Source: Pristiophorus japonicus
Taxonomy: Eukaryota
NCBI RefSeq assembly: GCF_044704955.1
Contig: NC_091999.1
Coordinates: 65,596,001 to 65,660,000 of the forward strand
DNA length: 64,000 nucleotides
Direction of reading: 5' to 3'
Below, piece by piece: positions 3,285 through 47,489 of this stretch. A program made the translations under genes and the position numbers. Below the pieces are notes generated by a model that did no database searches, was not told the origin of the DNA, and worked only from the letters and a program-made list of their open reading frames with translations. Numbering within the stretch: the first letter of the stretch is position 1; every line of letters begins with the position of its first letter.

Positions 3285-3479
3285 ATTAACCTCAGCAACG
3301 CTAGGAATTAATATTTGGCTATGTTAAACAATTCTAAGCGACTTGATCTGGGTGCAAAGTACGTCCAAAATTGCACTAGTTTTGAGAAAGGTTTTTGTTC
3401 ACAAGTTTCCACCGAACTAATTTGCACATCATCAAACTTAAAATCTGCCATGAACCAGGACAATCGGTAAATGTCTTAG

Positions 3480-4100: not shown

Positions 4101-4127
4101 CTGGGATACGTGGGCCTCTACACAGGC

Positions 4128-10632: not shown

Positions 10633-11315
10633 NNNNNNNNNNNNNNNNNNNNNNNNNNNNNNNNNNNNNNNNNNNNNNNNNNNNNNNNNNNNNNNNNNNN
10701 NNNNNNNNNNNNNNNNNNNNNNNNNNNNNNNNNNNNNNNNNNNNNNNNNNNNNNNNNNNNNNNNNNNNNNNNNNNNNNNNNNNNNNNNNNNNNNNNNNNN
10801 NNNNNNNNNNNNNNNNNNNNNNNNNNNNNNNNNNNNNNNNNNNNNNNNNNNNNNNNNNNNNNNNNNNNNNNNNNNNNNNNNNNNNNNNNNNNNNNNNNNN
10901 NNNNNNNNNNNNNNNNNNNNNNNNNNNNNNNNNNNNNNNNNNNNNNNNNNNNNNNNNNNNNNNNNNNNNNNNNNNNNNNNNNNNNNNNNNNNNNNNNNNN
11001 NNNNNNNNNNNNNNNNNNNNNNNNNNNNNNNNNNNNNNNNNNNNNNNNNNNNNNNNNNNNNNNNNNNNNNNNNNNNNNNNNNNNNNNNNNNNNNNNNNNN
11101 NNNNNNNNNNNNNNNNNNNNNNNNNNNNNNNNNNNNNNNNNNNNNNNNNNNNNNNNNNNNNNNNNNNNNNNNNNNNNNNNNNNNNNNNNNNNNNNNNNNN
11201 NNNNNNNNNNNNNNNNNNNNNNNNNNNNNNNNNNNNNNNNNNNNNNNNNNNNNNNNNNNNNNNNNNNNNNNNNNNNNNNNNNNNNNNNNNNNNNNNNNNN
11301 NNNNNNNNNNNNNNN
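10633..11315. other. Assembly gap (683 N)
   Basis: Run of N next to a degenerate CATC/CTAT microsatellite. Confidence 1.
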
Positions 11316-12928: not shown

Positions 12929-13011
12929 AGTGACGTGGATCCAGAAGCCGCCTCTATCTGGGAATCAATGGCTGGCACCTGCAGCATCGCCCCCATCTCC
13001 CGGGTATTTAA
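12929..13011 (+). promoter_or_regulatory. Candidate VH promoter: CRE-like decamer AGTGACGTGG and TATA-like TATTTAA
   Basis: AGTGACGTGG at 12929-12938 and TATTTAA at 13005-13011 upstream of the leader ATG; no octamer seen. Confidence 0.55.
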
Positions 13012-13103
13012 CAGCCAGTCACTGGGTCTGCAATACAACAGTCCGGGAGTGGGTTTCCTCAGTGAGTTCTTGCCTGAAATATTTACCACACTTTACCAGG
13101 AGG

Positions 13104-13149
13104 ATGAGGTCGGCGATTTCTCTAACTCTTTTGCTGGCTTTTTTAACCC
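13104..13149 (+). pseudogene. IgH leader exon (MRSAISLTLLLAFLT)
   Basis: ATG at 13104, hydrophobic signal peptide typical of shark VH leaders, phase-1 donor GTGAGT at 13150, 127-bp intron. Confidence 0.93.
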
Positions 13150-13276
13150 GTGAGTAGTTTTTATTGTCCAGTCTCTCAATGTAAATGTCTCACTCTTACC
13201 CTCCCTCTAGAATATTACTGAGTCAGGAATCATTTTTCCAGGATTAATCCTCCAGGTGTTTTGATGTTTTTCACAG

Positions 13277-13638
13277 GTATCCAGACGGATATGGTGTTGA
13301 CTCAGCCCGAGGCAGAGAGCAGGATTCCCGGAGGCTCCATGACTTTGAACTGTAAATCAAGCGGGCTCAGTCTTAGCAGCGACAGATTGAGCTGGATCCG
13401 CCAGAATCCAGGACAGGGGTTGGAGTGGCTGGTTTACTTCAGCAGTCCGTCGCGCAGGTATTAAGCCCTTGAGACTGAGACCGATTTAGTGCATCGAAAG
13501 ACACTTCAAACAGTATCTTCACGTTGGATATGAAGAATCTAAGGTCCGAAGGCACCGCCATATATTACTGTGGAAGGGACGTTGGCTGGTACTCTCTCGC
13601 CGAGTGGGGACAGGGGACATTGTTGACAGTGCCGACAG
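13277..13638 (+). pseudogene. Germline-joined VDJ exon (IgM-type VH)
   Basis: Acceptor tttttcacag; IQTDMVLTQPEAESRIPGGSMTLNCKSSG..WIRQNPGQGLEWLV; TAA at 13462-13464; 1-nt deletion near 13480; then [52 protein letters not shown]; GT donor at 13639. Confidence 0.95.
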
Positions 13639-13775
13639 GTACAAGGAAAACATACACTGATTCGGTAACTGTTGGATTTGAGTCTTTATTTTACATTTCT
13701 GTTTATTTCAATAATTCATTCATTCACTGAAACTTGGGTTCGCTGGGTTCTGTATTGAGATTGTTTGCAATGTTT

Positions 13776-15966
13776 CATAGAAACATAGAAACATAGAAAA
13801 TAGTTGCAGGAGTCGGCCATTCGGCGCTTCTAGCCTGCACCGCCATTCAATGAGTTCATGGCTGAACATGCAACTTCAGTACCCCATTCCTGCTTTCTCA
13901 CCATACCCCTTGATTCCCCTAGTAGAAAGGACTCCATCGAACTCCTTTTTGAATATATTTAGTGAATTGGCCTCAACAAATTTCTGTGGTAGAGAATTCC
14001 ACAGGTTCACCACTCGCTGGGTGAAGAAATTCCTCCTCATCTCGATCCTAAATGGCTTACCCCTTATCCTTACACTGTGTTTCCTGGTTCTGGACTTCCC
14101 CAACATTGGGCACATTCTTCCTACATCTAACCTGTCTAACCCCGTCAGAATTTTAAACGTTTCTATGAGGTCCCCTCTCATTCTTCTGAACTCCAGTGAA
14201 TACAAGCCCAGTTGATCCAGGTCATTCTTGATAGGTCAGTCCCGCCATCCCGGGAATCAGTCTGGTAAACCTTCGCTGCACTCCCACAATAGCAAGAATG
14301 TCCTTCCTCAGGTTAGGAGACCAAAACTGTACACAATACAAAGGTGTGGCCTCAACAAGGCCCTGTACAACTGTAGCAACACCTCCCTGCCCCTGTACTC
14401 AAATCACCTCGCTATGAAGGCCAACATGCCATTTGCTTTCTTAACCGCCTGCTGTACCTGCATGCCAACCTTCAATGACTGATCTACCATGACACCCAGG
14501 TCACATTGCACCTCCCCTTTTCCTAATCTGTCACCATTCAGATAATACTCTGTCTCTCTGTTTTTACCACCTCACATTTATCCACATTATACTTCATCTG
14601 CCATGCATTTGCCCACTCACCTACCCTATCCAAGTCGTTCTGCAGCCTCATAGCATCCTCCTCGCAGCTCACACTGCCACCCAATTAGTGTCATCCGCAA
14701 ATTTGGAGATACTACATTTAATCCCCTCGTCTAAATCATTAATGTTCAGTGTAAACAGCTGGGGCCCCAGCACAGTACCTTGCGGTACCCCTCTAGTCAC
14801 TGCCTGCCATTCTGAAAAGTCCCCATTTACTCCTACTCTTTGCGCCCTGTCTGACAACCAGCTCTCAATCCATATCAGCACACTGCCCCCAATGCCATGA
14901 GCTTTAACTTTGCACATTAATCTCTTGTGTGGGACCTTGTCGAAAGCCTTCTGAAAGTCCAAATATACCACATCAACAGTTCTCCCTTGTCCACTCTACT
15001 GGTACATCCTCAAGAAAGTCCAGAAGATTTGTCAAGCATGATTTCCCTTTCACAAATCCATGCTGACTGGGACCTATCATATCACCTCTTTCGAAATGCA
15101 CTGCTATGAAATCCTTAATAATTGATTCCATCATTTTACGCACGACCGATGTCAGGCTGACTGGTCTATAATTCCCTGTTATCTCTCTCACTCCGTTTTT
15201 AAAAAGTGGGGTTACATTGGCTACCCTCCACTCCATAGGAACTGATCCAACGTCAATGGAATGTTGGAAAATGACTGTCAATGCCTCCACTATTTCCAAG
15301 GCCATCTCCTGAAGTATTCTGGGATGCAGTCCATCAGGCCCTAGGGATTTATCGGCCTTCAATCCAATCAATTTCCCCAACACAATTTCCCGACTAATAA
15401 GGATTTCCCTCAGTTCCTCCTCCTTACTCGACCCTCCGACCCCTTTTATATCCGAAAGGTTGTTTGTGTCTTCCTCAGTGAATACCGAACCAAAGTACTT
15501 GTTCAATTGGTCCGCCATTTCTTTGTTCCCCGTTATGACTTCCCCTGATTATGACTGCAGGAGACCTACGTTTGTCTTTACGAACCTTTTTCTCTTTACA
15601 TATCTATATAAACTTTTGCAATCCGTCTTAATGTTCCCTGCAAGCTTCTTCTCTTATTCCATTTTCCCTGCCCTAATCAAACCCTTTGTCCTCCTCTGCT
15701 GAGTTCTAAATTTCTCCCAGTCCCCGGGTTCGCTGCTAATTCTGGCCAATTTGTATGCCACTTCCTTGGCTTTAATACTATCCCTGACTTCCCTTGATAG
15801 CCACGGTTGAGCCACCTTCCCTTTTTTATTTTTACGCCAGACAGGAATGTACAATTGTTGTAGTTCATCCATGCGGTCTCTAAATGTCTGCCATTGCCCA
15901 TCCACAGTCAACCCCTTCAGGATCATTCGCCAATCTATCCTAGCCAATTCACGCCTCATACCTTCA
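13776..15966 (-). mobile_element. CR1 LINE, 5'-truncated, well preserved
   Basis: [36 protein letters not shown]; (TTTCTATG)n tail at 13776. Confidence 0.97.
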
Positions 15967-16605
15967 AATTGATATAGGATAGTGTTGTACTATTGCATGC
16001 TATTACTATATTATAATAATATAATTTGTATTAATTTCAAACTGTTTCAAGCTTTAAAATTGTTAATTTAATGGTTATTACATACAGTACCTTCATGTGA
16101 TACTGCTGCAAAGCGTTTATGGAACTAAACTGCTTCTCCACAGAACATGATGTTGAGCGATTGGGCCCCTTATTGATGTGATTTGGTGTTTATCTGTTGA
16201 TCGGAATGTGCACCTAGATTACTTTTAATGCCCAATGGTTCTTAAATGGATTGGTGTTTCTACAATGTTTACTCTCGGTGACATCTAATGAGTTCAGTTT
16301 TTCTGACCAAATGTAAATATTACGCTTCAATATGTTTGAAATAAGATTTTAGGCAAAACACAGACAGCTTTAGCAGTCAAAAATAATCTTCATATATTTT
16401 AAAAATCTTTTAAATCAGATATTTACCATTGTCACCAAATAATCTAATGTTCACTATTGGTCATATTTAAAACGTGAAATGTTATTGTATGTAATATCCA
16501 TTTAATTAACAATTTTAAAGCTTGAAACATCTTGAAATTAATACAAATTAAATTATTATAATATAGTAATAGCATGCAACGTACAACACTATCCTATATC
16601 AATTT
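15967..16605. repeat. Inverted repeat, arms approx. 15967-16091 and 16483-16605
   Basis: About 125-bp arms, near-identical reverse complements. Confidence 0.9.
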
Positions 16606-17313
16606 CAATTTGTTAAGCATGATCCGTCTACTCACAAATCTGCTGTCCTTATTTTATACCTCCTCTGAGTTCAATAATTATTTCATTCAGTGATAGACGG
16701 GTTCAGTGGATACTGTCGTGAGGTTCGTTTTGGCAAAATAACATTTGATTATCCTGAAAGGGTTCACAGAATTAAGCTGCCGGTTCACAAAACATCCAAT
16801 TGCGGGATTCAGCCCCTAAGTGCTGTGATTTGCTATTTATCTGCTTCCCAGAGTGTGTGGCTGTGTGAATTGGAATAACTAAACATTGTGAAACTGTTTG
16901 GCTTCTGTGCGATGTTTAATCTCAGTGACATCGATCTGCTGCAGGTTTTTATGATCCGTTGTAAACTATTTGAAATATTATTGTAGGCAGACAACAATTA
17001 GGTTTTATAAATCAGATAATTTACTCCATCTGTGTATTTAAGTGGTAAATTCAGATTCAGCTGTTAATCTACGGTTTAAGGTGCACACATACTTGAAATT
17101 TTCCTGTAATTACGAATTATTCAACTAAAAATGTGCAGGTTTAAGGAGAGTTGGATTAATATCACTCAAAATAATATAATGCGGTAGTATTGCCCAGTAT
17201 CACTAAACATGGTACAGCATTAATATGAATGCATTGAACATGAGTCACATTCCAAAATTCTGCTGTGCACTGGTCACAATTAACGTAAGCAGAAAATTTA
17301 AGAGCATGGAGAC

Positions 17314-20300
17314 TGTAAATTCCTGTCCCTGGAGTACAGACTCACACGAGGCACATGCTGAAGTCAAGGTCACTCAGGTCCTTCACTTTTATTTCACAGC
17401 TCTCGAATGCCGCACTTGCCTGAGACCTCTCTTCATACACCTGTGTGGAACAGGTATGCAGCGTACATGCAAGTGCACCCCTGATGGTAAGTTATGCTTG
17501 TGGTTACAGGTCATATCTAGTTACAGTCATGTATAGCATGGTAAGATACAGTTATGTACAGTAATGTGAGATACATGATATCATCCTCCCCAAAGGTCAT
17601 ATTGTCTTTAAACATTCAGTTTCTCAGGTGGTCTACGCTCTCGCGTGGAGCGTCTTGGTTGTGGTTCAGTTCTTTCACTTGTTGCCTGTTTTTTTTTCGG
17701 TGTGATTGTTGGTATCTCACCTGGGCTGTCTGTTGAGATAGCCCTTTCCTCGGGTTGTTCCCTCTGTCTGTCCACCAGGTGTGGTGTGAGTTCCACTTTG
17801 TAGTCTGCCTCTGTTTCTGCAGTGTTGTTGGTGAATCAACTTTTTATTGGTCGACATGCCTCCGGCTGATTTGGCCATTTTCCACTTGTACCACCAGTAG
17901 CGTGTTTCCTTCCTTGCCTGTTACTGTCCCTGCAAGCCATTTGGGACCCCTGCCATAGTTCAGCACAAACACTTTGTCCCCGATCTCATTCCACCTCCCC
18001 CTCTAATTTCGTTTATGGTACTCAGTTAACCTATGGGGCTTTGCCTCAACAATTTCATGCATCTCCGGGAGGATAAACGAGAGAATTGTCATTAAGGTCC
18101 CTTTCATTAATAGTTGCGCTGAGGGAACCCCAGTCAATAAATGCGGACGAGATCTGTTTGCCAGCAGCAGTCTCTCGTTTCAGTCCTGTTCTTCAGACCC
18201 TTCCGTGGTCGCCAGGGATACCCTGCTTAGCGCGTCGGCACAGTTGTCTGTGCCTCGTCTGTGCCTTATTGTGCAACGTAAGACGCCAACATGAGTGCCC
18301 ATCGCTGAATGCGCGCCGAGGCGTTGGTGTTTATTGCCTTGCTCTCAGATAGTAGGGACGTGAGAGGCTTGTGGTCGGTTTCTAACGCGAACTTGGCCCC
18401 CAAAAGTTATTGGTGCATCTTTTTGACATTGTACACGCAAACAAGCGCCTCATTCTCCACCATACCGTAGCCACGCTCTGCCCATGAAAATGACCTAGAG
18501 GCATAAGTTATGGGTTGTAATTTACCCGTCCCATTGACATGCTGTAAAACGCAACTGATCCCATACACTGACGCGTCACATGTAAGAAGTAGCTTTTTAC
18601 CTGGATCAAAAAAAAACACTGTTGGAACATCGAAGGTCGCGTGCCTAATGGAAGGCGTGATCCTGGGCGTCACCCCAAAACCAATCGCATCCCTTTCTGA
18701 GTAGCACGTGGAGAGGCTCCAGCAGCATGCTTAATTTGTGCATTAAATTCCCAAAGAAATTGAGCAGCCCGAGAAAGACGTGCCGTTCTGAGACATTCGG
18801 GCGCCTGGGTGCCAGACGAATTGCTTCGGTTTTGGATTCGTTTTGGCGGCTTCCATTTGCGGCAATCCTTCTGCCCAAAAATTCAACCTCAGGTGCGAGA
18901 AACAGAGACGTCGATTTCTTAACTCTTAGGCCTACCTGATCCAACCGCATTAGTACTTCCTCCAAATTTCGGAGATGGGAGTCGGTGTCCATGCCCGTGA
19001 TAAGTATATCGTCTTGAAACACAACCGTCCCCGGGATGGACTTGAGCAAAATCTCCATGTTGCGCTGGAATATGGCAGCTGCCGACCTGATGCTGAATGG
19101 GCATCGATTGTGCATGAAAATGCCTCGATGTGTGTTGATGGTGGTGTGTAGCTTAGACTCTTCGGTCAGTTCTTGCGTCATGTATGCAGATGTGAGGTCT
19201 AGTTTCGAGAAACGTTTTCCTCCAGCCAATATAGCAAATAGGTCCTCCGCTCCAGGCAGCAGGTATTGGTCGTGTAGGGAGACTCTGTTTATGGTAGATT
19301 TGTATTCCCCAGAGATTCGTACGGATCCTTCAGGCTTCATGACTAGAACGATGGGATTTGCCCAGTCGCTAAATTCCACGGGTAATGTAATGCCTTCCCG
19401 CAGAAGCCTGTCCAGTTCAAGTTAAATCTTTACCCCTATCACATTGGGCACAGCTTTAGCCTTTTGGTGGAACGGTCTAGCATCCTGTGTGAAGTAGATT
19501 TGAACATTAGCCCGTTTGAAGGTGCCCACACCTGGCTGAAAGAGATGTTCAAATGGATTTAGAACTGTTGAGCAGGAGATCCGTTCCTCTGACGACATGG
19601 CGTGAACATCATCCCATTTCCAATTTAGTTTTGCCAGCCAACTTCTCCCCAGCAGTGTTGGGAGATCGCCGCGGACAATCCACAGGGGAAGTCGTTCACT
19701 GTCCCTTTGTGTGTGACTGAGAGCATGGCGCTGCCAAGGAGTGGGACGATTTCTTTTGGTGTGTTTGTTTGTATCTCGCCTGGGCTGTTTGTTTCATTCA
19801 GTATGATTGTTGGTATCTGGCGACAGACGGCTCTGTAGCGTGGAACCTTGGATTTTAAGCATGCCTTGTTTAATGATTAGCACTGCTCGCTCCGCCTGGC
19901 CATTGGAGGGCGGCTTGAACGGTGCCGTCTTAACGTTATTTATGTCGTGGTCAACTATAAAATCTTGGAATTCTTCGCTGGTGAAGCACGGACCATTATC
20001 ACTGACCAATATGTCAGGAATTCCGTATATTGTAAACATGGTCCCAAGGCTCTCCACCATGGTGGAGGTGGCGCTCGAATTTAAAATGGTGTATTCGATC
20101 CACTTTGAAAATGCATCGACGACTACGAGGATCACTTTGCCAATGAATGGGCTCGCATAGTCTACGTGCACCCGCGACTAGGGCCAGGTACTCCGTGGGG
20201 CCTCCCTGTGGGCATTACTGAGTTGGGCACAAATGGTGTACCCTCGGACGCAGTGTTCCAAGTCCGCATCAATGCCAGGCTAGCAGACGTGGGATCTGGC

Positions 20301-23300
20301 TATGGCCTTCATGAGAATGATCCCCGGGTGCTCGCGGTGGAGCTCCACGACAAATGCCTCTCTGCCTCGCAGAGGCATAAGTACTCAACTGTCCCACATC
20401 AGCCATTCTGCCTGTAGAGATAGTTCATGCATGCGCCTGTGGAAAGCTTTGATCTCCTAGGGGCAGTAATCGCGAGCCTCTGCCCAGTCACCAGTTAAGA
20501 CACATCGTTTGACTAAGGATAACGTGGTGTCGCTGGTCGCCCAGGCTCTGATTTGGCGAGCAGTCATGGGCAAACCTATGGACTCAAAGGCATTGATTGC
20601 CATGACTATCTCACAGTCCTGTTCATCAGACACTTCCATGGTCGCCATGCGTAGCCTGCTAAGCGCTTTGGCACAGTTGCCTGTGCCTGGTCTGTGCCTT
20701 ATCGTGTAGTCATAAGACGCCAGCATGAGTGTCCACCATTGGCGTTTGGCGTTTATTGCCTTGCTCTCAGATAGTTAGGATGTGAGGGGCTTGTGGTCAG
20801 TTTCTAACGCGACCTTGGCTCCGAAAATGTATTGGTGCATCTTTTTGACACCGTACACGCATGCGAGCGCCTCCTGCACCACCATACCGTACCCGTGCTA
20901 CGCCCACGAAAGTGACCTGGAGGCATAAGCTAAGGGTTGTAATTTACCCGTCCCATTGACATGCTGTAAAACGCAGCCGATCCCATACACTGACGCATCA
21001 CATGTAACAACTAGCTTTTTACCAGGATAAAAAAAAAACACTGTTGGAACGTTGAAGGTTGCATGCCTTATTGAAGGCGCATTCCTGGGCGTCACCCCAA
21101 AACCAATCGCATCCCTTTCTGAGTAGCACGTGGAGAGGCTCCAGCAGCGTGCTTAATTTGTGCATAAAGTTCCCAAGGTAATTGAGTAGCCCAAGAATGG
21201 CGCGCAGTTCTGAGACATTCCCGGGCCTGGGTGCCAGACGAATCGCTTCGGTTCTCGATTCTGTTGGGCGGATTCCATCAGCAGCAATCCTTCTGCCCAT
21301 AAATTCAAACTCGGGCGCGAGAAACAGACCCTTTGATTTATTAACACTTAGGCCTACCCAATCCAACCGCTTTAGTACTTCCTGCAAATTGCGGAAATGG
21401 AAGTCGGTGTCCATGCCCATGATAAGTATGTCGTCTTGAAACACAACTGTGTCCGGGATGGACTTGAGAAAACTATCCATGTTGCGCTGGAATATAGCAG
21501 CTGCCGACCTGATGCCGAATGGGCATCGATTGTACATGAAAATGCCTCGATGTGTGTTGATGGTGGTGAGTAGCTTCGACTCTTCAGTCATTTCTTGCGT
21601 CATGTACATAGAGATGTGGTCTAGTTTCGAGAAAAGCTTTCCTGCAGCCAATGTGGCAATTAGGTCATCCGCTCTGGCCACGGGTATTGATCCTATATGA
21701 AGACTCTATTTATGGTAGATTTGTAATCGCCACAGATTTGTACGGATCCATCAGGCTTCATGACTGGAAATTTGAGATTTGCCCAGTCGCTAAATTCCAC
21801 GGGTGAGATAATGCCTCCTCGGAGAAACCTGTCCAGTTCAAGTTCAATCTTTTCCCTCATCACATAGGGCACAGCTCTAGCCTTTCGATGGACTGGTCTA
21901 GCATCTTGTGTGATGCAGATTTTAACTTTAGCCCGTTTGAAGGTGCCCACACCTGGCTGAAAGAGATGTTCAAATCGACTTAGACCTGTTGAGCAGGAGA
22001 TCCGTTCCTCTGACGACATGGCGCGAACATCATCCCATTTCCAATTTAGTTTTGCCAGCAGTGCTGGGAGATCTCCGGGGACAATCCACAGGGGAATTCG
22101 GTTTACCGTCCCTTTATGTGTGACTGAGAGCATGGCGCTGCAAATGACTGAGACGATTTCTTTGGGAAAGGTCCTTAGTTTGGTGTCGGCCCTTGTGAGC
22201 TTTGATCTGTTGCTTTAGTGTGGTCACAGCTGTTCATATTGTTGAGCGCTCGTGAGCGATTGACTCGCTCCCGTATCCAGTTCCATATTTACGGGTATCC
22301 CTTTAACTAGGACCCCCATCTTTATTGGAGGCGTCTTGTTGTAAGAACAGTGTCCATTGATCGTGTTGACCCGCTGTACCTTGATGTTAAGGGCTCTGTC
22401 ACCACTGTCTTTTGGTCCGCTTTCCGACCCTTCCGATTCGTATACCAGCTGAGCTGCTGTTTTTCTGCGCATGCGGGCCAGATGGGCTGTATAGTTGCAG
22501 TTTCTGCAAACGGCATGCAGAAATCGACACCCCCTTGATGAGTGCCTTCCCCCACATGCCCAGCACAATCCGCTTCCATTGTTTCTGAAGGATGAGCTGC
22601 GTCTGGCTGATCACTCTTGAGCTTCTCTCAGTTTGTAGTTGATTGCTCGCAGTGTGGGTTGATGACGTGTGAACGGCCGTTCTTGCGACCCTTGGTGGTT
22701 TATGGCACTACTGCCTGCTGTTGAGGGCCTGCTCTCCTGCCTTTTTCTGTGTGTGGGGGTGGCGGCTTGTTTCACACTGTGAACCTCTTGTTCCGATGTT
22801 TCGTTAGTTGCCGTACCTGCAGTTTAGATCAAACTCGTTTCGTCTTCTCGTGCCAAAGATGTCTGTGCAACCAGTGCTGCTACCTCTAGGGTCAAGTTCT
22901 TGTTCTCCATATGCTTTCGAAATGTGCCTGCATGGCCTATTCCTTCAATAAACAAAGTCTCCCAGTACTTCTCTCCTTAGTTCATCGGAGAACTCACCTA
23001 AACTATCCAGCCTCCGATGTTTCGCCACAAAGTCGGGTATGCTCTGGCCCACGCAGCGTCTGTAGTTGTAGAAGCTTTGCCTGGCCATGTGTCGGCTGCT
23101 CGCTGGCTTCAGGTCGTCTCTTACCATGTGCTCAACTCTTCAAACTGGTTTCTCGGGTGCCAGCAGGTCCTTCATTAAGGCGTATGTTTTCGAGCCACAG
23201 CTGGTCAAGAGATGGGCTCTTCCCTTGTCTGCGTTATCGTCGCCTAACCAGTCTTTGGTTTCAAAGCTTTGCTGGAGCCTTTCTATAAAGTCCTCCCAAT

Positions 23301-23648
23301 TAGCTCCAGCATTGTATTTTTCATCTGAGCCGTTGGTCGCCATTCTGTGGATTCTGTAATCCCGAAACTCGTCGCAGCTGTAAAGTCCTGTCCCTGGAGT
23401 ACAGACTCACACGAGGCACATGCTGACGTCAAGGTCACTCAGGACCTGCACCTTTATTTCACAGCTCTCGAATGCCGCACAATGCCTGAGACCTCTATTT
23501 ATATACCTGTGTGGAGTAGTTATGAAGTGTTTCCTGAAAGTGCACATTTGATGGTAAGGTATGCTTGCGGGTTACAGGTCATAACTCGTTACAGTCAGGT
23601 ATAGCATGGTAAAATACAGTTATGTATAGTAATGTGAGATAAATGACA
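17314..23648 (-). mobile_element. Mag-type Gypsy LTR retrotransposon, both LTRs present, decayed, with internal pol duplication
   Basis: LTRs 17314-17580 and 23379-23648; TSD GAGAC/GAGTC; degenerate PBS GCTGCGACGAG; gag MATNGSDEKY.., CWAC zinc knuckle, protease MELDTGA, RT FQDD, integrase HVDYASPF/VSDNGPCF; PPT next to 17581. Confidence 0.95.
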
Positions 23649-23940
23649 GAGTCAATTTCTGATTATATTTGAAATTATTTTATTAATGGCGGACTATTCC
23701 ACTACAGTTCAATGAGATAAAAAAAAATAAATGTTTAAAATTTATTGTTATCTCCCTGTTTTACGCAGATTGTCAATTACATGCGAGTTGTAAATTGCAG
23801 TTTGTAAATGTCATAAATCTGTCGGGTTATTAAATTCTTATTGTTCAGCCGATATCGTTTAATTTCGTCCGTATTATTTGTTGTTTGATAACGAGCCAAT
23901 TATTAATAAACTAACCTGAAATCGTTCTTAAGATCATGAC

Positions 23941-24375
23941 TTGAATAACAACACCCTGTCCCAATAGCCGTGCTGCAAACGGGACAGAAATATAGATAGT
24001 GAACAGATTGTAACTGGGAGATATATTTAATTCTCATTCATGATAAATTGATTAACACAATCTCTTCTACACTTGTTCATTGCATTTCAGTGTCGCTGGC
24101 AGTCAAAGCATGGTTTATATGACTCTATTTAAACTGAGTAAGGCTGGAGACAGGCACATAACCCATTGAAATTCAAGCAGATTTATTTAATTACAAAAGG
24201 TCATTGTTATTTTTAAATTGAATAACAACATCCTGTCTCCCACATAGCTGTGCTGCACACGGGATAGAATTATCGACAGTGAACAGATTACAATTGAGAA
24301 TTATATTTAATTCCCATTCATGGTAAATTGATCAACAACATCTCTCCTCCATTTGCTCATTGCATTTCAGTGCCG
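23941..24375 (+). repeat. Direct repeat of about 155 bp (23941-24095 and 24218-24375)
   Basis: Both copies begin ttgaataacaaca and end cattgcatttcagtg. Confidence 0.85.
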
Positions 24376-25204
24376 TAATTGGCCTGAATGGTTTGTTCCC
24401 CGCCAGTTCTTTTGATCATTCTCGAACGTAGTTTCAATAAATAGCAGAACATATTTGATAATTCATTTAAGGGCATTCTGTTAAATATGGGAGTATAATT
24501 TAAAAAGATTGACTGTGTTATTAAATAGCCGGGAATCTGTTACTGACTACCTGTTGCTTTTACTTCATAAAACATTATTTTGTAGATAAGATTTAGGATA
24601 ATGTTTAAACTGGAGGGCCCTGATTTAGTAAACTCACGGCGTTACAACCCATCGGTAGTGAGTGAGATCTAACCAGGGCCACAATTTGAACAATTTAAAA
24701 TAGTCCACTCCTAAATTCATCATGTGGAATGCAGTCTGAGAATATATGGAGTTTATGTTGTCTCAGAGAGTTCAGTCATATGCAGTTTACAAGTGTTTAT
24801 ATAGAGAGCGGGAATGTGTTGGAATTAGTGACCGTTTTAACTTTTTCAACTTAATTTAAGTAAAAATAATATATTTGTCTAAATGTCTGTATCTATTAAT
24901 ATGAGTCATAATATTTTAATATTGATAAATGCCATGTTAATTTAACTGAAACCATAATTTTTCGCAAGTTAACTGTTAGAAACAGGATTAAAATGAATAA
25001 CAACTAATTGTATTATAATTCAGTAAAACATCAGCTAACATCAATGTTCTTTTAAAATATATCATTGCAAATTTATTAAACAAAAACGACCTTTCACAAC
25101 TGAGTTGTATACTGGATAGGATTACAGTTACTGCAAAATTTCAAGGGTTGGAGAGAATGTTAAATTATGTCTAAAATGAATTCAGAAAACAATACATATA
25201 TTAC

Positions 25205-26780
25205 TGATGAAATGCATCCCAGGGTATTGAAAGAGATGGCGGTTGCTATAGCAGATGCATTCGTTATAATCTACCAAAATTCTCTGGATTCTGGGGAGGT
25301 ATCATCGATTGGAAAGCAGAAAATATAACGCCTGTGTTATAAAAAGTGGACGACAAAAGGAATGTAACTATAGGCCGGTTAGTCTAACATCTGGAGTGTG
25401 GAAAATGCTTGAAGCTATCTTTAAGGAAGAAATAGCGGGACATCTATATAGGAATAGTGCAATCAAGCAGACGCAACATGGATTCATGAAGAGGAAATCA
25501 TGTTTAACTAATTCACCGGAATTTTCTGAGGATATAATGAGCATGGTGGATAGAGGTGTACTGATGGATGTGGTGTATTATGATTTCCAAAAGGAATTCG
25601 ATAAGGTGCCAAATAAAAGGTTACTGCAGAAGGTAAAGGTAGGCAGAGCCAGAGGAAATGTATTAGCATGGATAGAGAATTGGCTCAGTAACAGAAAGCA
25701 GAGAGTTGGGATAAATGGGACCGTTTCAGGGTGGCAATCGGTGGTTAGTGGTGTGCCACAGGGATTGTTGCTGGGACCACAACTGTTCACAATATACATA
25801 GATGATCTGGAAGAGGGGACAGAGTGTAATGTAACAATATTTGCAGATGACACAAAGATTAGTGGGAAAGCGGGTTCTGTAGAGGCCAAAGAGAGGCTGC
25901 AAAGTGATTTAGATAGGTTAAGCGAATGGGCTAAGATTTGGCAGATGGAATACAATGTCGAAAAATGCGAGGTCATCAACCTTGGAAAAAAAACAGTAAA
26001 AGGGAATATTATTTGAATGGGAAGAAATTAGAACATGCTGCGGTGCAGAGGGACCTGGGGGTCCTTGTGCATGAATCCCAACAAGTTAGTTTGCAGCTGC
26101 AGCAGGTAATCTGGAAGGCGAATGAAATGTTGTCCTTCATTCCGAGAAGGATGGAGTAAAAATGCAGGGAGGTCATGCTGCAACAGTACAGTGTATTGTT
26201 GAGGCCACACCTGGAGTACTGCGTGCAGTTTTGATCACCTTACTTAAGGAAGGATATACTAGCTTTGAAGGGGGTACAGAGCCGATTCACTCGGCTTATT
26301 CCGGAGATGAGGGGGTTACCTTATGATGATAGATTGAGTAAACTGGGTGTTTCCTCGTTGGAGTTCAGAAGGATGAGGGGTGATCTTAGAGAAACATTTA
26401 AAATAATGAAAGGGATAGACAAGATAGAGGCAGAGAGATTGTTTCCACTGGTCAAGGAGACGAGACGAGGGAGCACAGACTCAAAATACGGGGGAGCCAA
26501 TTTAGAACCTAGTTGAGAAGGAATTTCTTCTTCCAAAGGGTTGTGAATCTGTGGAATTATCTGCCCAAGGAAGCAGTTGATGCTAGCTCATTGAATGTAT
26601 TCAAATCACAGAGAGATCGATTTTTAACCAATAAGTTAATTAATGGTTATGGGGAGCGGGCGGGTAAGTGGAGCTGAGTCCACGGCCAGATCAGCCATGA
26701 TCTTGTTTAATGGAGGAGCAGGCTCGAAGGGCTACATGGCCTACTCATGTTCCTAATTCCTATGTTCTTATTATGTTATG
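25205..26780 (+). mobile_element. CR1 LINE, 5'-truncated
   Basis: ORF 25309-26016 RT motifs (NYRPVSLTS, GVPQG, FADD) and CR1 3' UTR/tail. Confidence 0.95.
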
Positions 26781-27409
26781 CTATTCAGTCTTACTTAGTC
26801 GTGCTCAGGTCGATTATGTGTCGCCACAAGTTTTAATGAACGACGCATCGATGATTTTACAGGTTATATTTAGTTGTCAACTTATAATAAACCTGTGGGT
26901 AATCGGTTTTAAATGTAAATGTCTCCCGATTTGTGAAACACTGATACAATTTTTTCAGGGAAACTAAATCTTCCGTGATTTGTAAGGTTATAGACAGGGA
27001 GAGAGAAACGACTGAAAGTCGAAGCGAGTTTTTCCAAATTAATATCAGTTTAATTTCAAAGCACGTGCAGACCTGAGATCGGCGCAAATTGAGAAGAGAT
27101 CAATTAGAAATCAGTTTAATAAACTTGACAGAGTGAACCGATCTATCTGCTTAGAACACGATTGTTGCACCGGTTGTGCCTGCTTTGTTTTTGTGCGCCT
27201 ATGTTTCTGTGTGAGAATCAGGAGTCCTCCTAACTGGTTGTAAACCTGCCTCCTGTGTTTCATGGAGTACAATTCGGCTCAGTTATTTCAGAAGCTTTTA
27301 TCTGTAAGAATTCGATAGTTTCAATTTAAGTTTAAGGGGGCGATTCGGGAATGGGTTCAATAAACCCAGTTTGTGATATTCAAAATAATCAGTTCTGAAA
27401 AACTTCGGG

Positions 27410-27830
27410 CAAACTACAGAAGGAGCTTTAATAGGTTCCTAACCCGTGCTGTAACTGCCCTTATTGTTGTTCACTGTGCAATGTAGAGGGGGCTTCTTTA
27501 TCTAACCTGTGCTGTAACTGTCGCGTGAGTCTTTTATGGGACAGTTTGGAGGGAGAATTTATTATCACGTGTCTTATACTTGCCCTGGGAGTGTTTGATG
27601 GCACAGCATACAGGGAGCATTACTCTGTGTTTATCCCGTGCAGTATCTGCCTAGGGAGTATTTGATGGGACCGTGTACAGAGAGCTTTACTCTGCATTTA
27701 ACCTTAGCTGGAGTGTTTGAAAGTGCAGTGCAGAATTGGCTTTGCTCAGAATGAATCTCTTGCTAGACTTGACCATAGAGCGCTGCAAAGGGAGTTTTAA
27801 TCTCTATTATATGTACTTTAACAGACCTGA
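27410..27830 (+). repeat. Degenerate ~66-bp tandem repeat
   Basis: Unit approx. ctaacccgtgctgtacctgccctgggagtgtttgatgggacagtgtagagggagctttactctgtat; reverse copies near 48430-48510. Confidence 0.8.
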
Positions 27831-28569
27831 GAGTGATTTTTCCAGTGTTGTTCAAGGAATGTCAATCTACATCAACGTTATAAAGTGTGATTTCTCGAGA
27901 CAGATATATAAAAATCAAACGTTCCATTGCTCCAAAGCAACAAACCCGCACTGTTTGAATTTAAACTTATTGCAAAAAAAACCTGCCCAATTTTTAATGA
28001 ATTGGTCCATTTTACACATTCTGATTATCAGAAAATGTTTGAATGAGAGTGGCCTGATCGTGAGCTCAATTTCAGATCAAACAGTTTCAGGAAGTGATTG
28101 TAACGTTCCAGAAAGGAGCACCTGTTGTGGTCTGATGGGAGGCTGGAAGCTATTTGGACAAAATAAATGGTGAATGTCGGGACTTCCGCTTCAAATAACC
28201 ATCATGGGAACCTTGTGTGTGAAAGCATTATTTAGGTAAAATGTATTTTTTTAAGTTACAACGGGGCAAACTCGATTGAGATGCATCGATTGGAGTGGGT
28301 CACAACACACGCCACACAGTTACTGACCTGCACTTATCTGATACATTTAAAGAGGTATAGTGAGCTTGTGATGAGTTGTCATTTACAATATTCTTTCAGG
28401 CAGTGTGATGGTTTCCACCTAAATCCTTGGCGTCAACTTCCTCAGGCCATTTATTTATAATTTCCTCTTGCATTATAACAAACAATTAACATAGATCTGA
28501 TAAATAAGTTCAACATTATAAATTGTTTCCTCTAATTTAATCTGGGAGAACTAATTCAGTTGAGTGAAG

Positions 28570-30740
28570 TAGAATCATAGAATCATCGTAGACATTTAGA
28601 GCACAGAAGTCCATTTCGGCTTTTCAGTTATCCAGCTGAAACCCGCTTTCCAGCACTTGGTCCGTGCCCTGCAGGGTACATCACTTCAAGTGCACACCCA
28701 AGCACCCGTTAAATGTGATTTGGGCTTCTGCCTCCAGCACTCATTCAAGCAAGGAGGTACAGACCCCCACCACCTTCTCGGTGAAGACATTTCCCCTCAT
28801 ACCTCCGCTAAATCGCTCAACAATTCCGTTAAATCGATGTCACTTGGTTGTTGATCCCTCTGCCAAGAGAAATACGTCCTTCCTATCCGCTTTCTCTCGG
28901 CCCCTCATAATTATATGCACCACAATAAGATCACCCCTCCGTCTCCGCTGTTCCAAGAAAAACAAACCCAGCCTATACAAACTTTTCTCATAGCTAAAAC
29001 TTTCCAGACTGAGCAACATACTCGTACGCCCCTTCTCTACACTTGTGGAAGCGTAACCTCCCTGCTCTTGTATTCTATCCTTGAGTATATAAAGACACGC
29101 ATTCTGTATGCCGACCTGTGCTGCTACCTTGAATAATCTGTGCACCTGAAATCTAAGGTCCCTTTGTTCCTCCACACTTCCCGTTATCTTGCCATTTAAT
29201 GTTTATTCCCTTGTATTTTTTGCCCTCCCCAAATGCATTACCTCACACTTCTACGGATTGAAATCCATTTGCCACTGTTCAGCCCACCTGACCAGTTAAT
29301 TCATATGCTCCTGCAGGTGGCAGCATTTTTCTTAATTATCGAGCATGCCTATTTTAATATCATCATATTCCCTACATTCAAGTCCAAATCGTTGATATAT
29401 ATCACAAAAAGCATGGGACCTGTCGAGTCTCACTGGAAACAGCCTTCCAGTCCCGCAAACATGCATCAAACATTAGTCTTTCCTTCATGCCTCTGACACA
29501 ATGTGGAATCCAACTTGCCACTTTGCCCTGGATCTCATGGGCTTTTATTTTCGCAATCAGCCTGTCATATGGGAACTAAGAATCTCAGAGCATAGAATCG
29601 TTGGCCCGCTTTGCTTGTACTGGCTCTGAAAGAGCTGTCCAAAATCCATTCCCAGCTTTTTCCTCATAACATTCCAAATGAGTTCTCTACAAGTACACGT
29701 CCAGTTGCCGAGTGCATTCCAGAAATTGAAACTCTTCCTTTGAAAAAAAAAATCCAAATTTCCCCTGTAGATCCTTTGCCAATTATTTTAAAGCTGTGTC
29801 CTTTTCTTACCAACCTCACCAGAGGAAATCATTTCTCCTTACTTACTGTGACAAAACCTCTCACAATTTCAAACTCCTCTATAAGCTAACCCCTTTAACG
29901 TTGACTCCTGTAAGGAACATTCCCGGCTTTTCAATTTTATCCACATAACTGAAGTCTCTCATCCCTGCTACCATCATTGTCATCATCCTCTCCACCGACT
30001 TCAAGGCCTTATCATCCTTCCTAAAATGTGGTGGTCAGAATTGTATACACTACTCCATCTATGCCTAACCAGTGATTGGTAACAGTTTAGCATGACTTCC
30101 ATGTTTCTGTATTCAATGGCCCTATTACAAAGCCAATTATCCCATATACATTCGAGCTAGCTGTGTAATCAAATTGCGCGGTCACAGTCACCGATATGTG
30201 AATAGGCACCTCAGGTCGCTCTGCACTTGCACTCCCTCAAAATAGTACCAGTTAGATTATATTTCCGCTCCCTGTTACTTATCTGCATTAACTTGCATCA
30301 GCCGCATTTCTGCCCATTTCACCAGTCTGTCTATTTCCTCCCGACGTCCACTGCTATCCTGCTCACCAGTTACTACGTTGTCAAGTGTTGCGTTATCCAC
30401 AAACATGAAGACTGTGCTGCCTATTAATAAGTCCAGGTAATTTATATATAATGTAAGAAATGCACTGTCCATAATACAGACCCATGGGCGAACCCATTCC
30501 TCTCCAGTCAGAAAAACCATTCGTTCACCACTACTCTCTGTCTTCTCTCCCTCAGAAAATTAAGTACCTAGGTATCTATCCCTTCAATCCCATATGTTCC
30601 TTTTTCCCAAATAAGTCTTTTATGATATTCTTGATGAAGTTGAACTTGAAAGTCTATCCTTCCACGATCGACGTCAAAACTATCCTCCACCCTCTTTGTT
30701 ACTTTCCACTTAAGACCGAGCTTCCAGTATCAGACAAATA
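28570..30740 (-). mobile_element. Two older CR1 LINE 3' fragments
   Basis: RLGLFFLEQRRRRGDLI motif, tail at 28570 and second tail near 29580. Confidence 0.8.
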
Positions 30741-32465
30741 AGCCGCAGCTGTTTGAGTAATCTGCATAAAACCGGAAGCGAGCGTTGCCCAAATCAGCAG
30801 TAAGCACGTCAGTTACTCTTTGTACTTCCGTGTGCAGATGCCACTGATAAACAATCGATGTATAATGCTAAAGGATTGGCAATATTAGATATTTAGAGCA
30901 GAAACCTATCGTGATGTTTAGCTTATGTCAGTAACAAACAGCAACAAGAATTGACTGTAACGACGCAGAAAGCAGCACGTGTTATCCTTGTGGGAGGTTG
31001 GAGAACTATTTGGAAAATTTTAATGGACCGTTTAAAGTGCATCGCTCCATATAATCAACTTTTGGATTTGTATTGAATTCTGTAAATTTAGTTGAGCGAA
31101 TGGGAGGAGGAAGGTCAGGAGACATCCAATCTGTAGCAAGGGATAGAGTACAAATCACATCGCATCGCTCTTCCTCCAATTCTGAGAAGAAAAGAGATAG
31201 ACTCGAATAAATCTAATTTAATCTGAAGCTTGAATCTTCTAAATCAGGTTGTGGAAAAGTTCCCTGTTCAAAAATATGGTCTGAATTATTCACTTCAATT
31301 TTAAAGAGACTTCAACAATTTAATGTAAACGTCATTTATTGTCATGGGAACAAAGCAGATCTTTATGAGGTCTAATAGAGAGTTCTTGGAATTATGATGG
31401 GTTCTTTGAAGGGATTCGGGAAGCATATTTCCCCAGGTTAGTGAATTGGTGAGTCAAAAGCAGAAATTGAAAATCAGCAGTAATAGAATACATGGAGAGG
31501 TTTTATTCTATTACTCTACACTGGGGACTGTTTGGACATGGGATGTTTTATTAGAAAGATGGCTGCATGCAGAATCCATAATAACTTGATAAAATTGAAC
31601 TATCGTGATGAAGATTGGGAATTGAAAGGAGAAAGGATTGGTAGAGAGACATTTCAAAGGCCTGAAGGGGCCGAATAGGCTCCTTCTCTGTTGTAAAATG
31701 TTATTATCTCATAATTCTGGGTCATGCTTCATAAACATGCCGGCATCTAGCTGTATGAGTTGTGCGCTTAGGAGAACTAACCCTGCTGCTATTGAATCAA
31801 GTGTGTCTCCTGAAAACAACAACTTGCATTTATATTGTGCCTTTAACCTAGTGAAACGTCCATAGATGATTCATAGGGGCGTTAAGCCGATACAATCTAG
31901 CATCCTGCCACAGAATGAAATATGAATGTTTCATCAGGATGGCTGTTAGTTATTATGAGAGTTGACCAAATGCTTGCCTAGATGGTAAGTTTTAATGCAG
32001 CATCGTAAAATACAGAGATGGCTATATTCTGCTATCATATAATGGTCTTCTTCTGTGCTGATAATAAGAGGCTGATAGCAAAAGGATGTAGGGAGGAGCT
32101 CGGTGCACAGAATATGAACGAATCTAATCTTAAAATGGTTGGAGATTGAGGGAAATGTCCCATAAGAGGAGATCAAGAGCTGGAGGAAGTCGCCGATACC
32201 ATATTCTGGAATTCCCTTGGTACAAAGTCGTTTCCTATAGAATATGCCCATTTAAGACTAGTGACATTTCTTATGTAAAATACTTCAGTAACATGGAGGC
32301 ATTTCACATCAGGTCACGCTAACCACAGAAACTCAAATGCTGATTTAGGTTTTGATCAGCAAATGATGGAATTAGTTCATTCTGCAGTCAAATTTCGCGA
32401 TGCTTGTTTACCTTATAAGCACTGATTGCAGAGTCTAACTTGTCCAATTGGCCATTCTTTCCCAG

Positions 32466-32764
32466 CGACACCGTCTGCCCCCATACTCTGCGGCCTGCGC
32501 TCCTCCTGTGAACAACCCAACATCGACGGCCCCATCACCTACGGGTGTTTGGCAATAGACTTCTCCCCGGAAATCACCATCCTTTCCTGGATGAAAGATA
32601 AAGAGAAAATTACCACTGGATTGAAGACCTACCCGTGACTGCTCAATAAGAAGGGAGCCGACACCCTGCGCAGCCAATTAACCATCACCGAGTGAGTGAT
32701 GGGGAGCAGCACAATCTACTACGAGGTTCGACGAAATGGGTCAGTCTGGAAAATCAACATGCAG
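32466..32764 (+). pseudogene. ighm: Cmu1 exon
   Basis: [81 protein letters not shown]; TGA at 32636 and 32693; second canonical Cys is Tyr; donor reads GCGAGT. Confidence 0.93.
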
Positions 32765-32883
32765 GCGAGTGTTTTGCGATACAGGGATGCAAACTGTGAT
32801 AAGCAGAGAAGTTATACTGTTTTCTATACAACTTGATTAAACCAGATTTAGAGTGCACAATTCTGGTCTTTTTGTCACAATTA

Positions 32884-34497: not shown

Positions 34498-34808
34498 ATC
34501 GTGCGGTACATCATCCAAGTATTTTCTTTACCCTGAGTTCAACTGAAGAAATCGCCAGAAGCAGATCTGCAACAGTCATGTTTCAATCATCGATTTCCGT
34601 CCAAGAGAAGTGACGTTGAATTGGCTGAGAAATGGACAAGTCATGGATTTGGACATCGCCACCTCTCCTGTCTTTGAAGTTAACAAGAACTTCTCAATGA
34701 CCAGTCGGCTTATTCTCCCCGCCGAGGAATGGTTCTCCCTCTCAGTCTATACCTCGCACGTTTCTCATCAAGGTTTCACCCAAAGCCGAACCATTACCAG
34801 ATCTCACG
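34498..34808 (+). pseudogene. ighm: Cmu2 exon
   Basis: Acceptor ttttcttgcag; [27 protein letters not shown]-(frameshift)[18 protein letters not shown]..[37 protein letters not shown]; donor GTAAGA at 34809; both canonical Cys lost. Confidence 0.92.
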
Positions 34809-36255: not shown

Positions 36256-36564
36256 ATGAATCTTTGTGCAAATATACGAAAATCACTCTTCTTCAACCGC
36301 CACTAGAACATGTCTTACTGGAGAAGACGATGATCCTAACCTGCATTGTGTCTGATGCTCCTTATGGGGTCACCGTGTCCTGGACCCGAAAAAAGGAGAA
36401 TTTGAAATCAGAGATTTCCCTCCAACCGGGAGAGTATTCCAACAGCGTGATCAGCAATTTAAACATCTCAACATAAGCCTGGCTAAGAGGGTATGAGTTC
36501 TACTGAGTGGTGAGTCATCACGAAATGTTGACTCCTAAAAGAGGTTTCATCCACAAGGAAAAGG
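36256..36564 (+). pseudogene. ighm: Cmu3 exon
   Basis: [69 protein letters not shown]; stops at 36474 and 36504; donor GTGAGT at 36565. Confidence 0.93.
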
Positions 36565-37080: not shown

Positions 37081-37472
37081 GGAATGATCTGCGGGAACCG
37101 GCCGTGTCTTTCCTCCTGCCGTCGGCAGAGGACGTCTCTGCTCAGATGTTGGTCAGCCTCACCTGCTTAGTAAGAGGTTTCTCCCCGCGAGAGATCTTCG
37201 TCTCGTGGACCGTCAATGAGAAAACGGTGATTTCCGGCAACTACAAGAACACCGAGATGATGGCGGAGAACGGCAGCAGATCCTTCTTCATCTACAGCCT
37301 GCTATCCATTGCAGCCGAGGAAGGGGGCAGCGGCTCTTCCTACTCCTGTGTGGTGGGAGATGAAGCGATCCCCTTCAAGATCACCAACATAACCGTCAAT
37401 AAATCCAGTGGTAAACCCAGTTTTGTGAACATTTCCCTTGTTCTGAAGGACACCATCAATGTTTGTCAATGA
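37081..37472 (+). pseudogene. ighm: Cmu4 exon plus secretory tailpiece (frame still open)
   Basis: [51 protein letters not shown]; tailpiece [20 protein letters not shown] with N-glycosylation site and penultimate Cys; internal donor G/GTAAAC at 37410/37411 for the membrane form. Confidence 0.95.
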
Positions 37473-47361: not shown

Positions 47362-47489
47362 ATTCCTCAGACCTCCTCTGGAGTGAAGTCTATGAGGACG
47401 AGAGCGGCAACAGCTCGACAACCACTTCCACATTCATCATCCTGCTCTTCCTGAGCATTTTCTGCAGCTCTGCAGTCACTCGACTGAAG
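47362..47489 (+). pseudogene. ighm: IgM TM1 exon
   Basis: Acceptor gttcttgcag; DSSDLLWSEVYEDESGNSSTTTSTFIILLFLSIFCSSAVTRLK = acidic spacer plus degenerate CART motif; donor reads GCGAGA. Confidence 0.92.

What the first reader, a model, noticed from the sequence alone, without database searches (positions are those of the whole stretch)
13104..13638. Germline-joined VDJ: a pre-assembled antibody heavy-chain variable exon in genomic DNA
Seen: FR3 (YYC, TGT at 13569) runs directly and in frame through a 33-nt junction ([11 protein letters not shown]) into WGQG and a J splice donor at 13639, with no heptamer/nonamer signals or V-D-J spacers, while the leader intron and all constant introns are kept. 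Known: cartilaginous-fish IgH genes lie in V-D-D-J-C clusters and some are germline-joined, attributed to RAG activity in germ cells (e.g. nurse shark IgM1gj). Inference: this is a heritable fixed-specificity antibody gene; the in-frame junction is compatible with a period of function before decay, although one in three random joins is in frame.
Basis: partly seen in the sequence, partly recalled or inferred. Interest (0 to 1): 0.85.

Follow-up and report, generated by a model that had tools for sequence, protein, structure and literature searches.

The report
Dead germline-joined shark IgM gene
This is a shark-type antibody (IgM) heavy-chain gene whose V, D and J pieces are already fused in the inherited DNA, a long-known habit of cartilaginous fish, but this copy is a broken, retroelement-swollen pseudogene and so is ordinary.

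Summary
A leader exon (13104-13149), a leader intron, and a single exon (13277-13638) run from FR1 through Cys (TGT 13569), an 11-codon CDR3 and WGQGTLLTV to a GT donor at 13639. No recombination signal lies anywhere nearby. The window holds no free D or J and no second V.

A 355-base contig from sequencing runs spans CDR1 to 37 bases past the J donor. Its depth equals that of the unique flanks, so the join is not a minor somatic clone. All informative runs come from one animal, however.

The gene is a four-domain IgM cluster: CH1-CH4 with a secretory tail, and TM1 at 47362. It is dead.
- **V exon:** a TAA at 13462 and a one-base frame slip before FR3, both confirmed by the read contig.
- **CH1:** two stops and a lost Cys.
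- **CH2:** a frameshift and a lost Cys.
- **CH3:** two stops.

The J-C intron is about 19 kb and is filled with LINE and LTR elements.

"Fixed-specificity antibody gene" applies at most to its past. Germline-joined VDJ genes have been known in sharks and skates since the late 1980s. This scan has already noted several joined or partly joined IgM clusters in the same genome, one of them intact. Interest is low: a new member of a known kind.

The parts
13104..13149 (+). Leader exon (MRSAISLTLLLAFLT + 1 nt), phase-1 donor GT at 13150
   Evidence: sequence read directly
13150..13276 (+). Leader intron, retained (GT..AG)
13277..13638 (+). Fused V-D-J exon, 362 nt. FR1-CDR2 is readable at 13279-13461. 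TAA at 13462-64. A one-base frame slip lies near 13477-13480. FR3-CDR3-FR4 is readable at 13479-13637. J donor GT at 13639.
   Evidence: Pfam V-set on both pieces. PDB VH alignment through FR4. A 355-nt read contig covers 13322-13676 with no gaps and one substitution.
13572..13604 (+). CDR3 / V-D-J junction ([11 protein letters not shown]), no stop, no RSS remnant
13639..32465 (+). J-CH1 intron, about 18.8 kb. It holds a CR1/LINE insertion (about 13774-16600), an LTR retrotransposon (17313-23646) and a LINE RT (about 25270-26670).
   Evidence: RT and integrase Pfam hits. LTR pair 88.5% identical. Repeat pile-up from 13774 on in the reads.
32466..32765 (+). CH1 exon, broken. In-frame TGA at 32636 and 32693. 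Second domain Cys replaced (YYEV). No GT at the expected donor (CAGGCGAGTG).
   Evidence: Pfam C1-set
34498..34808 (+). CH2 exon, broken. It is 311 nt, with a frameshift near the first Cys. Second Cys replaced (YTSHV). Donor GT at 34809.
   Evidence: Pfam C1-set E 6.6e-9
36256..36564 (+). CH3 exon, broken. In-frame TAA at 36474, and TGA at 36504 in place of the second Cys. Donor GT at 36565.
   Evidence: Pfam C1-set/Ig_3
37081..37472 (+). CH4 exon with secretory tailpiece (..[20 protein letters not shown], stop at 37470). The frame is open, but it has W>G, H>D and M>K at positions invariant in four relatives.
   Evidence: Pfam C1-set E 6e-17. PDB IgM/IgA tailpiece chains, E down to 6e-38. Relatives and alignment.
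47362..47489 (+). Probable TM1 exon (..STTTSTFIILLFLSIFCSSAVTRLK). Acceptor AG is present. The donor position reads GC.
   Evidence: Motif and hydrophobic-run scan plus sequence. Assigned by resemblance to the Ig transmembrane motif recalled from memory, not by a database hit.

Best explanation
This is one IgM heavy-chain minicluster of a cartilaginous fish (leader, V, D, J, CH1 to CH4 with secretory tail, TM1). Its V, D and J segments were joined in the germ line, with complete loss of the recombination signals and the spacers between segments. The published mechanism for this class, which I infer here, is RAG-type recombination in germ cells.

The joined gene later lost function, or was already losing it, and has since drifted. 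It accumulated nonsense mutations, frameshifts, lost cysteines, altered splice donors and about 25 kb of retroelement insertions. Today it makes no antibody chain.

Shown: the fusion, the absence of RSS, the retained introns, the IgM identity, the lesions, and the full genomic depth of the joined form in one animal.

Inferred: RAG as the agent, the order of events (join first, decay later), and fixation in the species.
For: **Fusion and missing signals**
- The FR3-CDR3-FR4 piece aligns over its full length to rearranged VH domains (E 3e-26). V-set hits cover both halves of the exon.
- No RSS lies near it, and the window has no second V and no free D or J.

**Not a retrocopy**
- The leader intron and all C introns are present with AG/GT sites.

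**IgM identity**
- There are four C1-set exons.
- CH4 plus tail best matches polymeric Ig mu/alpha chains.
- It is 69% identical to a Chiloscyllium punctatum protein and 56% identical to Callorhinchus IgH.

**Germline status**
- A 355-nt contig covers 13322-13676 in runs X2 and X4 at depths 18.3 and 11.3.
- Exact-match unique flanks have depths 14.9-17.7 and 11-12.6.
- No loose ends or alternative forms appear at the V or J border.
- This is the same logic as the equal Southern-band intensity in erythrocyte and leukocyte DNA in PMC2193156.

**Decay**
- The lesions are listed. The V lesions are reproduced by the read contig.
- LTR pairs inside the gene are 88.5% and 92.4% identical, with RT and integrase domains.

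**The class is published**
- PMC4279169, PMC5192425, PMC2435157 and PMC2193156.
Against: - All runs that hold the locus come from one sample and one study, probably the animal that was assembled. Its tissue is not on record. Runs from other samples covered only the repeat. Inheritance across individuals is therefore not shown.
- No split cluster of this genome could be read with these tools. D1, D2 and J boundaries, trimmed ends and P/N nucleotides (the footprint of RAG) were not examined.
- The C-exon lesions rest on the assembly alone, because reads were laid only on 12300-14300.
Confidence: 0.88

Rival explanations
1. The join is somatic (a B-cell rearrangement) or an assembly artefact, and the true germline locus is split.
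For: Only one individual is informative and its tissue is unknown. Shark blood and spleen DNA contain rearranged clusters.
Against: - The joined contig has the same depth as the unique flanks in two runs, with no competing split form or loose ends at the borders.
- Somatic joins in polyclonal tissue are invisible next to germline signal (PMC2193156).
- A cluster with five in-frame stops and two frameshifts could not have been selected in a clonal B-cell expansion.
Confidence: 0.04
2. It is still a working fixed-specificity antibody gene, and the lesions are sequencing errors or are bypassed.
For: The junction is in frame from FR3 to J. CH4 with its tail is open. Most splice sites are intact.
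Against: - The TAA at 13462 and the frame slip are reproduced in an independent read contig with no gaps.
- Four further stops, a CH2 frameshift and two lost domain cysteines lie in CH1 to CH3.
- No octamer within one mismatch lies in the 800 nt upstream.
- No RNA run holds the stretch, which is weak evidence.
Confidence: 0.02
3. It is a primordial, never-split V exon, a relic from before the RAG transposon invaded.
For: No RSS is present, and sequence alone cannot prove a past split.
Against: - The exon has an ordinary CDR3 and a J-type FR4 with a J-C splice donor. It belongs to an ordinary IgM cluster, and its promoter, leader and FR1 are 90% or more alike to many paralogues (depth pile-up).
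- Phylogenetic work showed that joined genes arise repeatedly and recently from split ones (PMC2193156).
Confidence: 0.02
4. The cluster was already a pseudogene when germ-cell recombination joined it, so the in-frame junction is chance and it never encoded an antibody in the joined state.
For: - About one in three random joins is in frame.
- Pseudogene clusters keep RSS and can in principle be cut.
Against: Nothing direct. The V exon has only two lesions against at least seven in the C exons, which says nothing about their order.
Confidence: 0.35

Closest known systems
Germline-joined (VD-J, VDD-J, VDJ) IgM heavy-chain clusters of the horned shark Heterodontus francisci and of skates
   Same: The organisation is the same: a minicluster with a leader intron, V-D-J fused without RSS, and its own four-exon C-mu. 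[quoted passage not shown]
   Different: This is another species, as judged by 69% CH4 identity to the nearest named shark protein. This copy is heavily decayed and expanded to more than 34 kb by retroelements, whereas the clusters described in Heterodontus are about 18-20 kb (PMC2191167 abstract).
Nurse shark IgM1gj
   Same: It has a fully germline-joined VDJ on an IgM-type heavy chain (PMC5192425, PMC4279169).
   Different: IgM1gj lacks CH2 and is functional and highly expressed in neonates. The gene here keeps a CH2 exon and is a pseudogene.
Nurse shark NS4 (kappa) germline-joined VJ light-chain genes
   Same: RSS are completely excised and coding ends are processed as in lymphocytes. Germline status was shown there by equal signal in erythrocyte and leukocyte DNA. 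Two of the six joined genes were out of frame (PMC2193156).
   Different: It is a light chain (VJ) rather than a heavy chain (VDJ).
Catfish second IgH locus with a germline VDJ and non-functional C exons
   Same: It is a germline-rearranged VDJ attached to a dead constant region (mentioned in PMC2193156).
   Different: It is in a bony fish and is a duplicate of a translocon-type locus rather than a minicluster.

Membership tests
Cartilaginous-fish IgM heavy-chain minicluster | Leader exon, phase-1 leader intron and a V-set variable exon | tested here: met
Cartilaginous-fish IgM heavy-chain minicluster | Four C1-set constant exons, the last carrying the mu-type secretory tailpiece with a penultimate Cys | tested here: met
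   Pfam C1-set on CH1-CH4. PDB IgM/IgA tailpiece chains. Shark and chimaera relatives with the same tail.
Cartilaginous-fish IgM heavy-chain minicluster | Transmembrane exon(s) downstream of CH4 | tested here: inconclusive
   A TM1-like exon at 47362-47489 was found by motif and hydrophobic run only. TM2 was not sought.
Cartilaginous-fish IgM heavy-chain minicluster | Separate V, D1, D2 and J flanked by 23/12 RSS (the rearranging form) | tested here: not met
   No RSS, and no free D or J. This is what makes it the joined form.
Germline-joined Ig gene | V, (D) and J contiguous in one exon with complete loss of heptamer and nonamer, introns retained | tested here: met
Germline-joined Ig gene | The joined form is present at germline dosage in DNA | tested here: met
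   Contig 13322-13676 has depth 18.3 / 11.3, against flanks of 14.9-17.7 / 11-12.6. One sample only.
Germline-joined Ig gene | The same joined form in non-lymphoid tissue and in several individuals | tested here: inconclusive
   Runs from other samples (X5, X6) covered only the CR1 repeat. The tissue of the informative sample is not on record.
Germline-joined Ig gene | Joint shows lymphocyte-type processing (trimmed ends, P/N nucleotides) relative to a related split gene | not testable with these tools
   No split cluster of this genome or species could be fetched. The V-region protein search was blank.
Functional fixed-specificity antibody (IgM1gj-like) | Open reading frame through V and C exons | tested here: not met
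   Five stops and two frameshifts. The V lesions are confirmed by reads.
Functional fixed-specificity antibody (IgM1gj-like) | Three C domains (CH2 absent) | tested here: not met
   A CH2 exon is present at 34498-34808.
Functional fixed-specificity antibody (IgM1gj-like) | Expression, especially early in life | tested here: inconclusive
   No listed holder of the stretch is an RNA run. No neonatal RNA was available.

The most novel reading that the evidence does not exclude
The cluster was for some time a working, hard-wired IgM of one specificity (CDR3 [11 protein letters not shown]), comparable in role to nurse-shark IgM1gj, and died later. This genome also holds intact and partly joined clusters. 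Together they would form a dated series of independent germ-line RAG events on one chromosome. The lesion load and LTR ages (88.5% and 92.4% LTR identity) would serve as clocks for how often germ-line joining happens and how long joined genes survive.
Probability: 0.3. Interest if true: 0.35.

Novelty: new member of a known kind. Interest (0 to 1): 0.15.

Why it matters
It matters little on its own. Germline-joined Ig genes in sharks and skates are textbook material, and this copy is non-functional.

Its modest value is as a data point. It shows that a fully joined VDJ cluster can persist as a decaying fossil. Its in-frame junction and its datable retroelement insertions could help time germ-cell RAG activity, and estimate the turnover of joined clusters, if all IgM clusters of this genome are compared.

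That would fit the published linkage of elasmobranch IgH clusters with the TCR alpha/delta locus (PMC12227049).

Tried and rejected
- **V-region homologue search.** A protein search with window:13222-13461 found no candidate. That is a limit of word index and length window, not evidence of novelty.
- **Findings look-ups by sequence and by relatives** were blank.
- **Octamer.** No ATGCAAAT within one mismatch lies in 12300-13110. I did not pursue the promoter further.
- **Runs from other samples.** X5 and X6 gave depth only on the CR1 repeat from 13774 on. They say nothing about the join in other animals.
- **CH4 constraint test.** The window copy differs at 8 of 58 positions that are invariant in three or more relatives. 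Other sequences give 1-17 as the odd one out. The count alone does not show relaxed constraint. Only the nature of W>G, H>D and M>K at positions shared even with chimaera is suggestive.
- **Retrocopy or cDNA-derived origin** was considered and rejected, because the leader intron and all C introns are kept.
- **Spliced model.** Every search was done exon by exon by reference, and pieces separated by stops were searched apart.
- **N runs** (10633-11315, 56197-56493) were left alone.
- **Absolute dating** of the LTR insertions was not attempted for lack of a substitution rate I could cite.

Full report
**1. The observation**

I read 12700-14000 and translated it. I fixed landmarks by exact string search.
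- An ATG at 13104 opens a 46-nt leader exon (MRSAISLTLLLAFLT plus one base). It ends at a GTGAGT donor at 13150.
- The intron ends with CACAG at 13276, and the second exon starts at 13277.
- From 13479 the reading frame gives [31 protein letters not shown] (TGT at 13569).
- Next come 33 nt encoding [11 protein letters not shown] (13572-13604), then [11 protein letters not shown].
- The exon ends at 13638 in front of GT at 13639.

The 53-residue piece aligns over its whole length, FR4 included, with rearranged VH domains of solved antibodies (best E 3e-26). It matches Pfam V-set positions 60-108 of 109. The upstream piece, 13279-13461, matches V-set positions 9-51.

A combined heptamer/spacer/nonamer pattern has no match in the window. 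A relaxed scan (CAC-anchored heptamer, spacers 11-13 or 22-24, at most 3 mismatches in all) finds four weak sites, none near V or J. The nearest exact CACAGTG sites are at 12088 and 14073.

A tblastn of each exon piece against the whole window finds no second V, no free J and no second C region. The fused V-D-J exon is therefore real at the sequence level.

**2. What the finding did not say**

Within the V exon, FR1-CDR2 and FR3-J are in different frames. The first frame ends in TAT TAA (TAA at 13462-64). The second frame is closed upstream of 13479 by TGA codons. The exon is 362 nt, one base short of a multiple of three.

The simplest reading is one nonsense change plus a one-base deletion near 13477-13480, at the CDR2/FR3 border. 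The exact site is inferred from my recollection of the usual shark ..YYAPEIKDRF.. motif and was not tested. Before those two lesions, the join would have been in frame and free of stops.

**3. The rest of the gene**

The constant region lies far downstream.
- **CH1** starts at 32466. Its first two bases complete the split codon begun by the last J base. It has in-frame TGA codons at 32636 and 32693 and reads YYEV where the second domain cysteine should be. No GT stands at the expected 3' boundary (CAGGCGAGTG).
- **CH2** (34498-34808) is 311 nt, with a frameshift near the first cysteine. It reads YTSHV in place of the second cysteine.
- **CH3** (36256-36564) has TAA at 36474, and TGA at 36504 in place of its second cysteine.
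- **CH4** (37081-37472) is open and ends in the secretory tail [20 protein letters not shown].
- **TM1.** A probable TM1 exon lies at 47362-47489. Its donor position reads GC.

Pfam gives C1-set for all four C exons.

CH4 plus tail best matches polymeric immunoglobulin chains with a tailpiece, mostly 'immunoglobulin heavy constant mu' (E down to 6e-38). In the large protein collection its best named relatives are a Chiloscyllium punctatum protein (69% identity) and Callorhinchus milii IgH (56%). Aligned with four relatives, this copy alone has G for W, D for H and K for M at positions invariant in the others. The overall count of such departures is not exceptional, however.

**4. Retroelements**

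The gene is swollen. The J-CH1 intron is about 18.8 kb. It holds:
- a CR1-type insertion starting at about 13774, where read depth jumps by four to five orders of magnitude, with an RT fragment on the minus strand;
- an LTR retrotransposon bounded by LTRs at 17313-17578 and 23378-23646 that are 88.5% identical, with an internal 2.4-kb duplication and RT and integrase domains;
- a LINE RT at 25270-26013.

Between CH4 and TM1 there is a 53-nt tandem array (37913-38684). There is also an ERV-like element with 445-nt LTRs that are 92.4% identical (38731-39175 and 44153-44597) and RNase H and integrase domains.

**5. Germline or somatic?**

The only runs that hold the stretch (X1-X4) come from one sample of one study, probably the assembled animal. 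Runs from three other samples hold next to none of its words.

I laid X2, X4, X5 and X6 on 12300-14300.
- In both X2 and X4, one 355-nt contig covers 13322-13676, from CDR1 through CDR2, FR3, CDR3 and J to 37 nt of intron. It has no gaps and one substitution (13544 G>T, mixed in X4, possibly heterozygous).
- Its depth is 18.3 in X2 and 11.3 in X4. That equals the depth of exact-match contigs on the unique flanks (14.9-17.7 and 11-12.6).
- No loose ends or alternative joints are reported at the V end or the J start.

A somatic join in a polyclonal tissue would be a tiny fraction of that depth. This is the same argument as the equal band intensity in erythrocyte and leukocyte DNA used to prove germline joining in the nurse shark (PMC2193156).

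The contig also reproduces the TAA and the frame slip, so those are not assembly errors.

The limits are these. One animal is informative, its tissue is unknown, contigs were used rather than raw reads, and X5 and X6 cover only the repeat.

Depth of 200-770 over 12903-13170 and 13238-13371 shows that the promoter, leader and FR1 are shared at 90% or more with many paralogous clusters.

**6. Mechanism**

The best reading is a germ-line V(D)J recombination within one IgM minicluster, followed by loss of function and neutral decay.
- Shown: the fusion, the clean loss of signals, the retained introns, the germline dosage and the lesions.
- Inferred from the literature: that RAG did it (PMC2193156; PMC4279169).
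- Unknown: whether the joined gene worked for a time or was already dead when joined. An in-frame join is expected by chance about one time in three.

**7. Comparison with what is known**

- Joined heavy-chain genes were first found in the horned shark, where their expression was not detected (PMC2193156).
- Nurse-shark IgM1gj is a functional joined gene without CH2, so the gene here, which has CH2, is not of that type.
- A catfish locus combines a germline VDJ with dead C exons.

Notes of this scan report that the same genome holds many IgM clusters with V-DJ, VD-DJ or VDJ joins, including an intact VDJ gene and several probably dead clusters. These notes are unchecked by me. Another note places TCR alpha/delta-type V segments just past the window's end. 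That would fit the published IgH-TCR alpha/delta linkage in elasmobranchs (PMC12227049).

**8. Verdict**

It is a new member of a known kind and a pseudogene. Interest is 0.15.

Noticed in passing
window 38731-44597: An ERV-like LTR element lies between CH4 and TM1. Its 445-nt LTRs are 92.4% identical. It has RNase H and integrase domains and further ORFs downstream of the integrase (42615-44012) with no Pfam match. I described it only.
   Followed up: partly
window 17313-23646: An LTR retrotransposon sits in the J-C intron, with its ORFs on the minus strand. Its LTRs are 88.5% identical. It has an internal tandem duplication of about 2.4 kb (18181-19756 against 20614-22163, 86%) that repeats the RT and integrase region.
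   Followed up: partly
window 37913-38684: A tandem array of a 53-nt unit, 14.7 copies, 73% matches, starts about 440 nt after the CH4 stop codon.
   Followed up: no
window 32765-32766 and 47490-47491: Two exon ends of the dead IgM gene (CH1 and TM1) read G|GCGAG where GTGAG-type donors are expected. This is the same T>C change at both. I could not resolve the CH1 phase.
   Followed up: no
window 13544: Read contigs carry T where the assembly has G (AGG>AGT in FR3). In run X4 both letters appear (11.3 of 17.4). This may be a heterozygous site, and if so both haplotypes would carry the joined form.
   Followed up: no
window 12903-13170 and 13238-13371: Contig depth is 10-40 times that of the flanks at 90% or more likeness. 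The promoter, leader and FR1 of this dead cluster are therefore still very like those of many other IgH clusters, while CDR2-FR3-J (13439-13639) is unique at that threshold.
   Followed up: no
window 1333-5196 and 59635-61407: Two copies of the same LINE-like element, 79-80% identical, lie near both ends of the window. A short-period, proline/serine/histidine-coding simple repeat lies at 646-1041.
   Followed up: no
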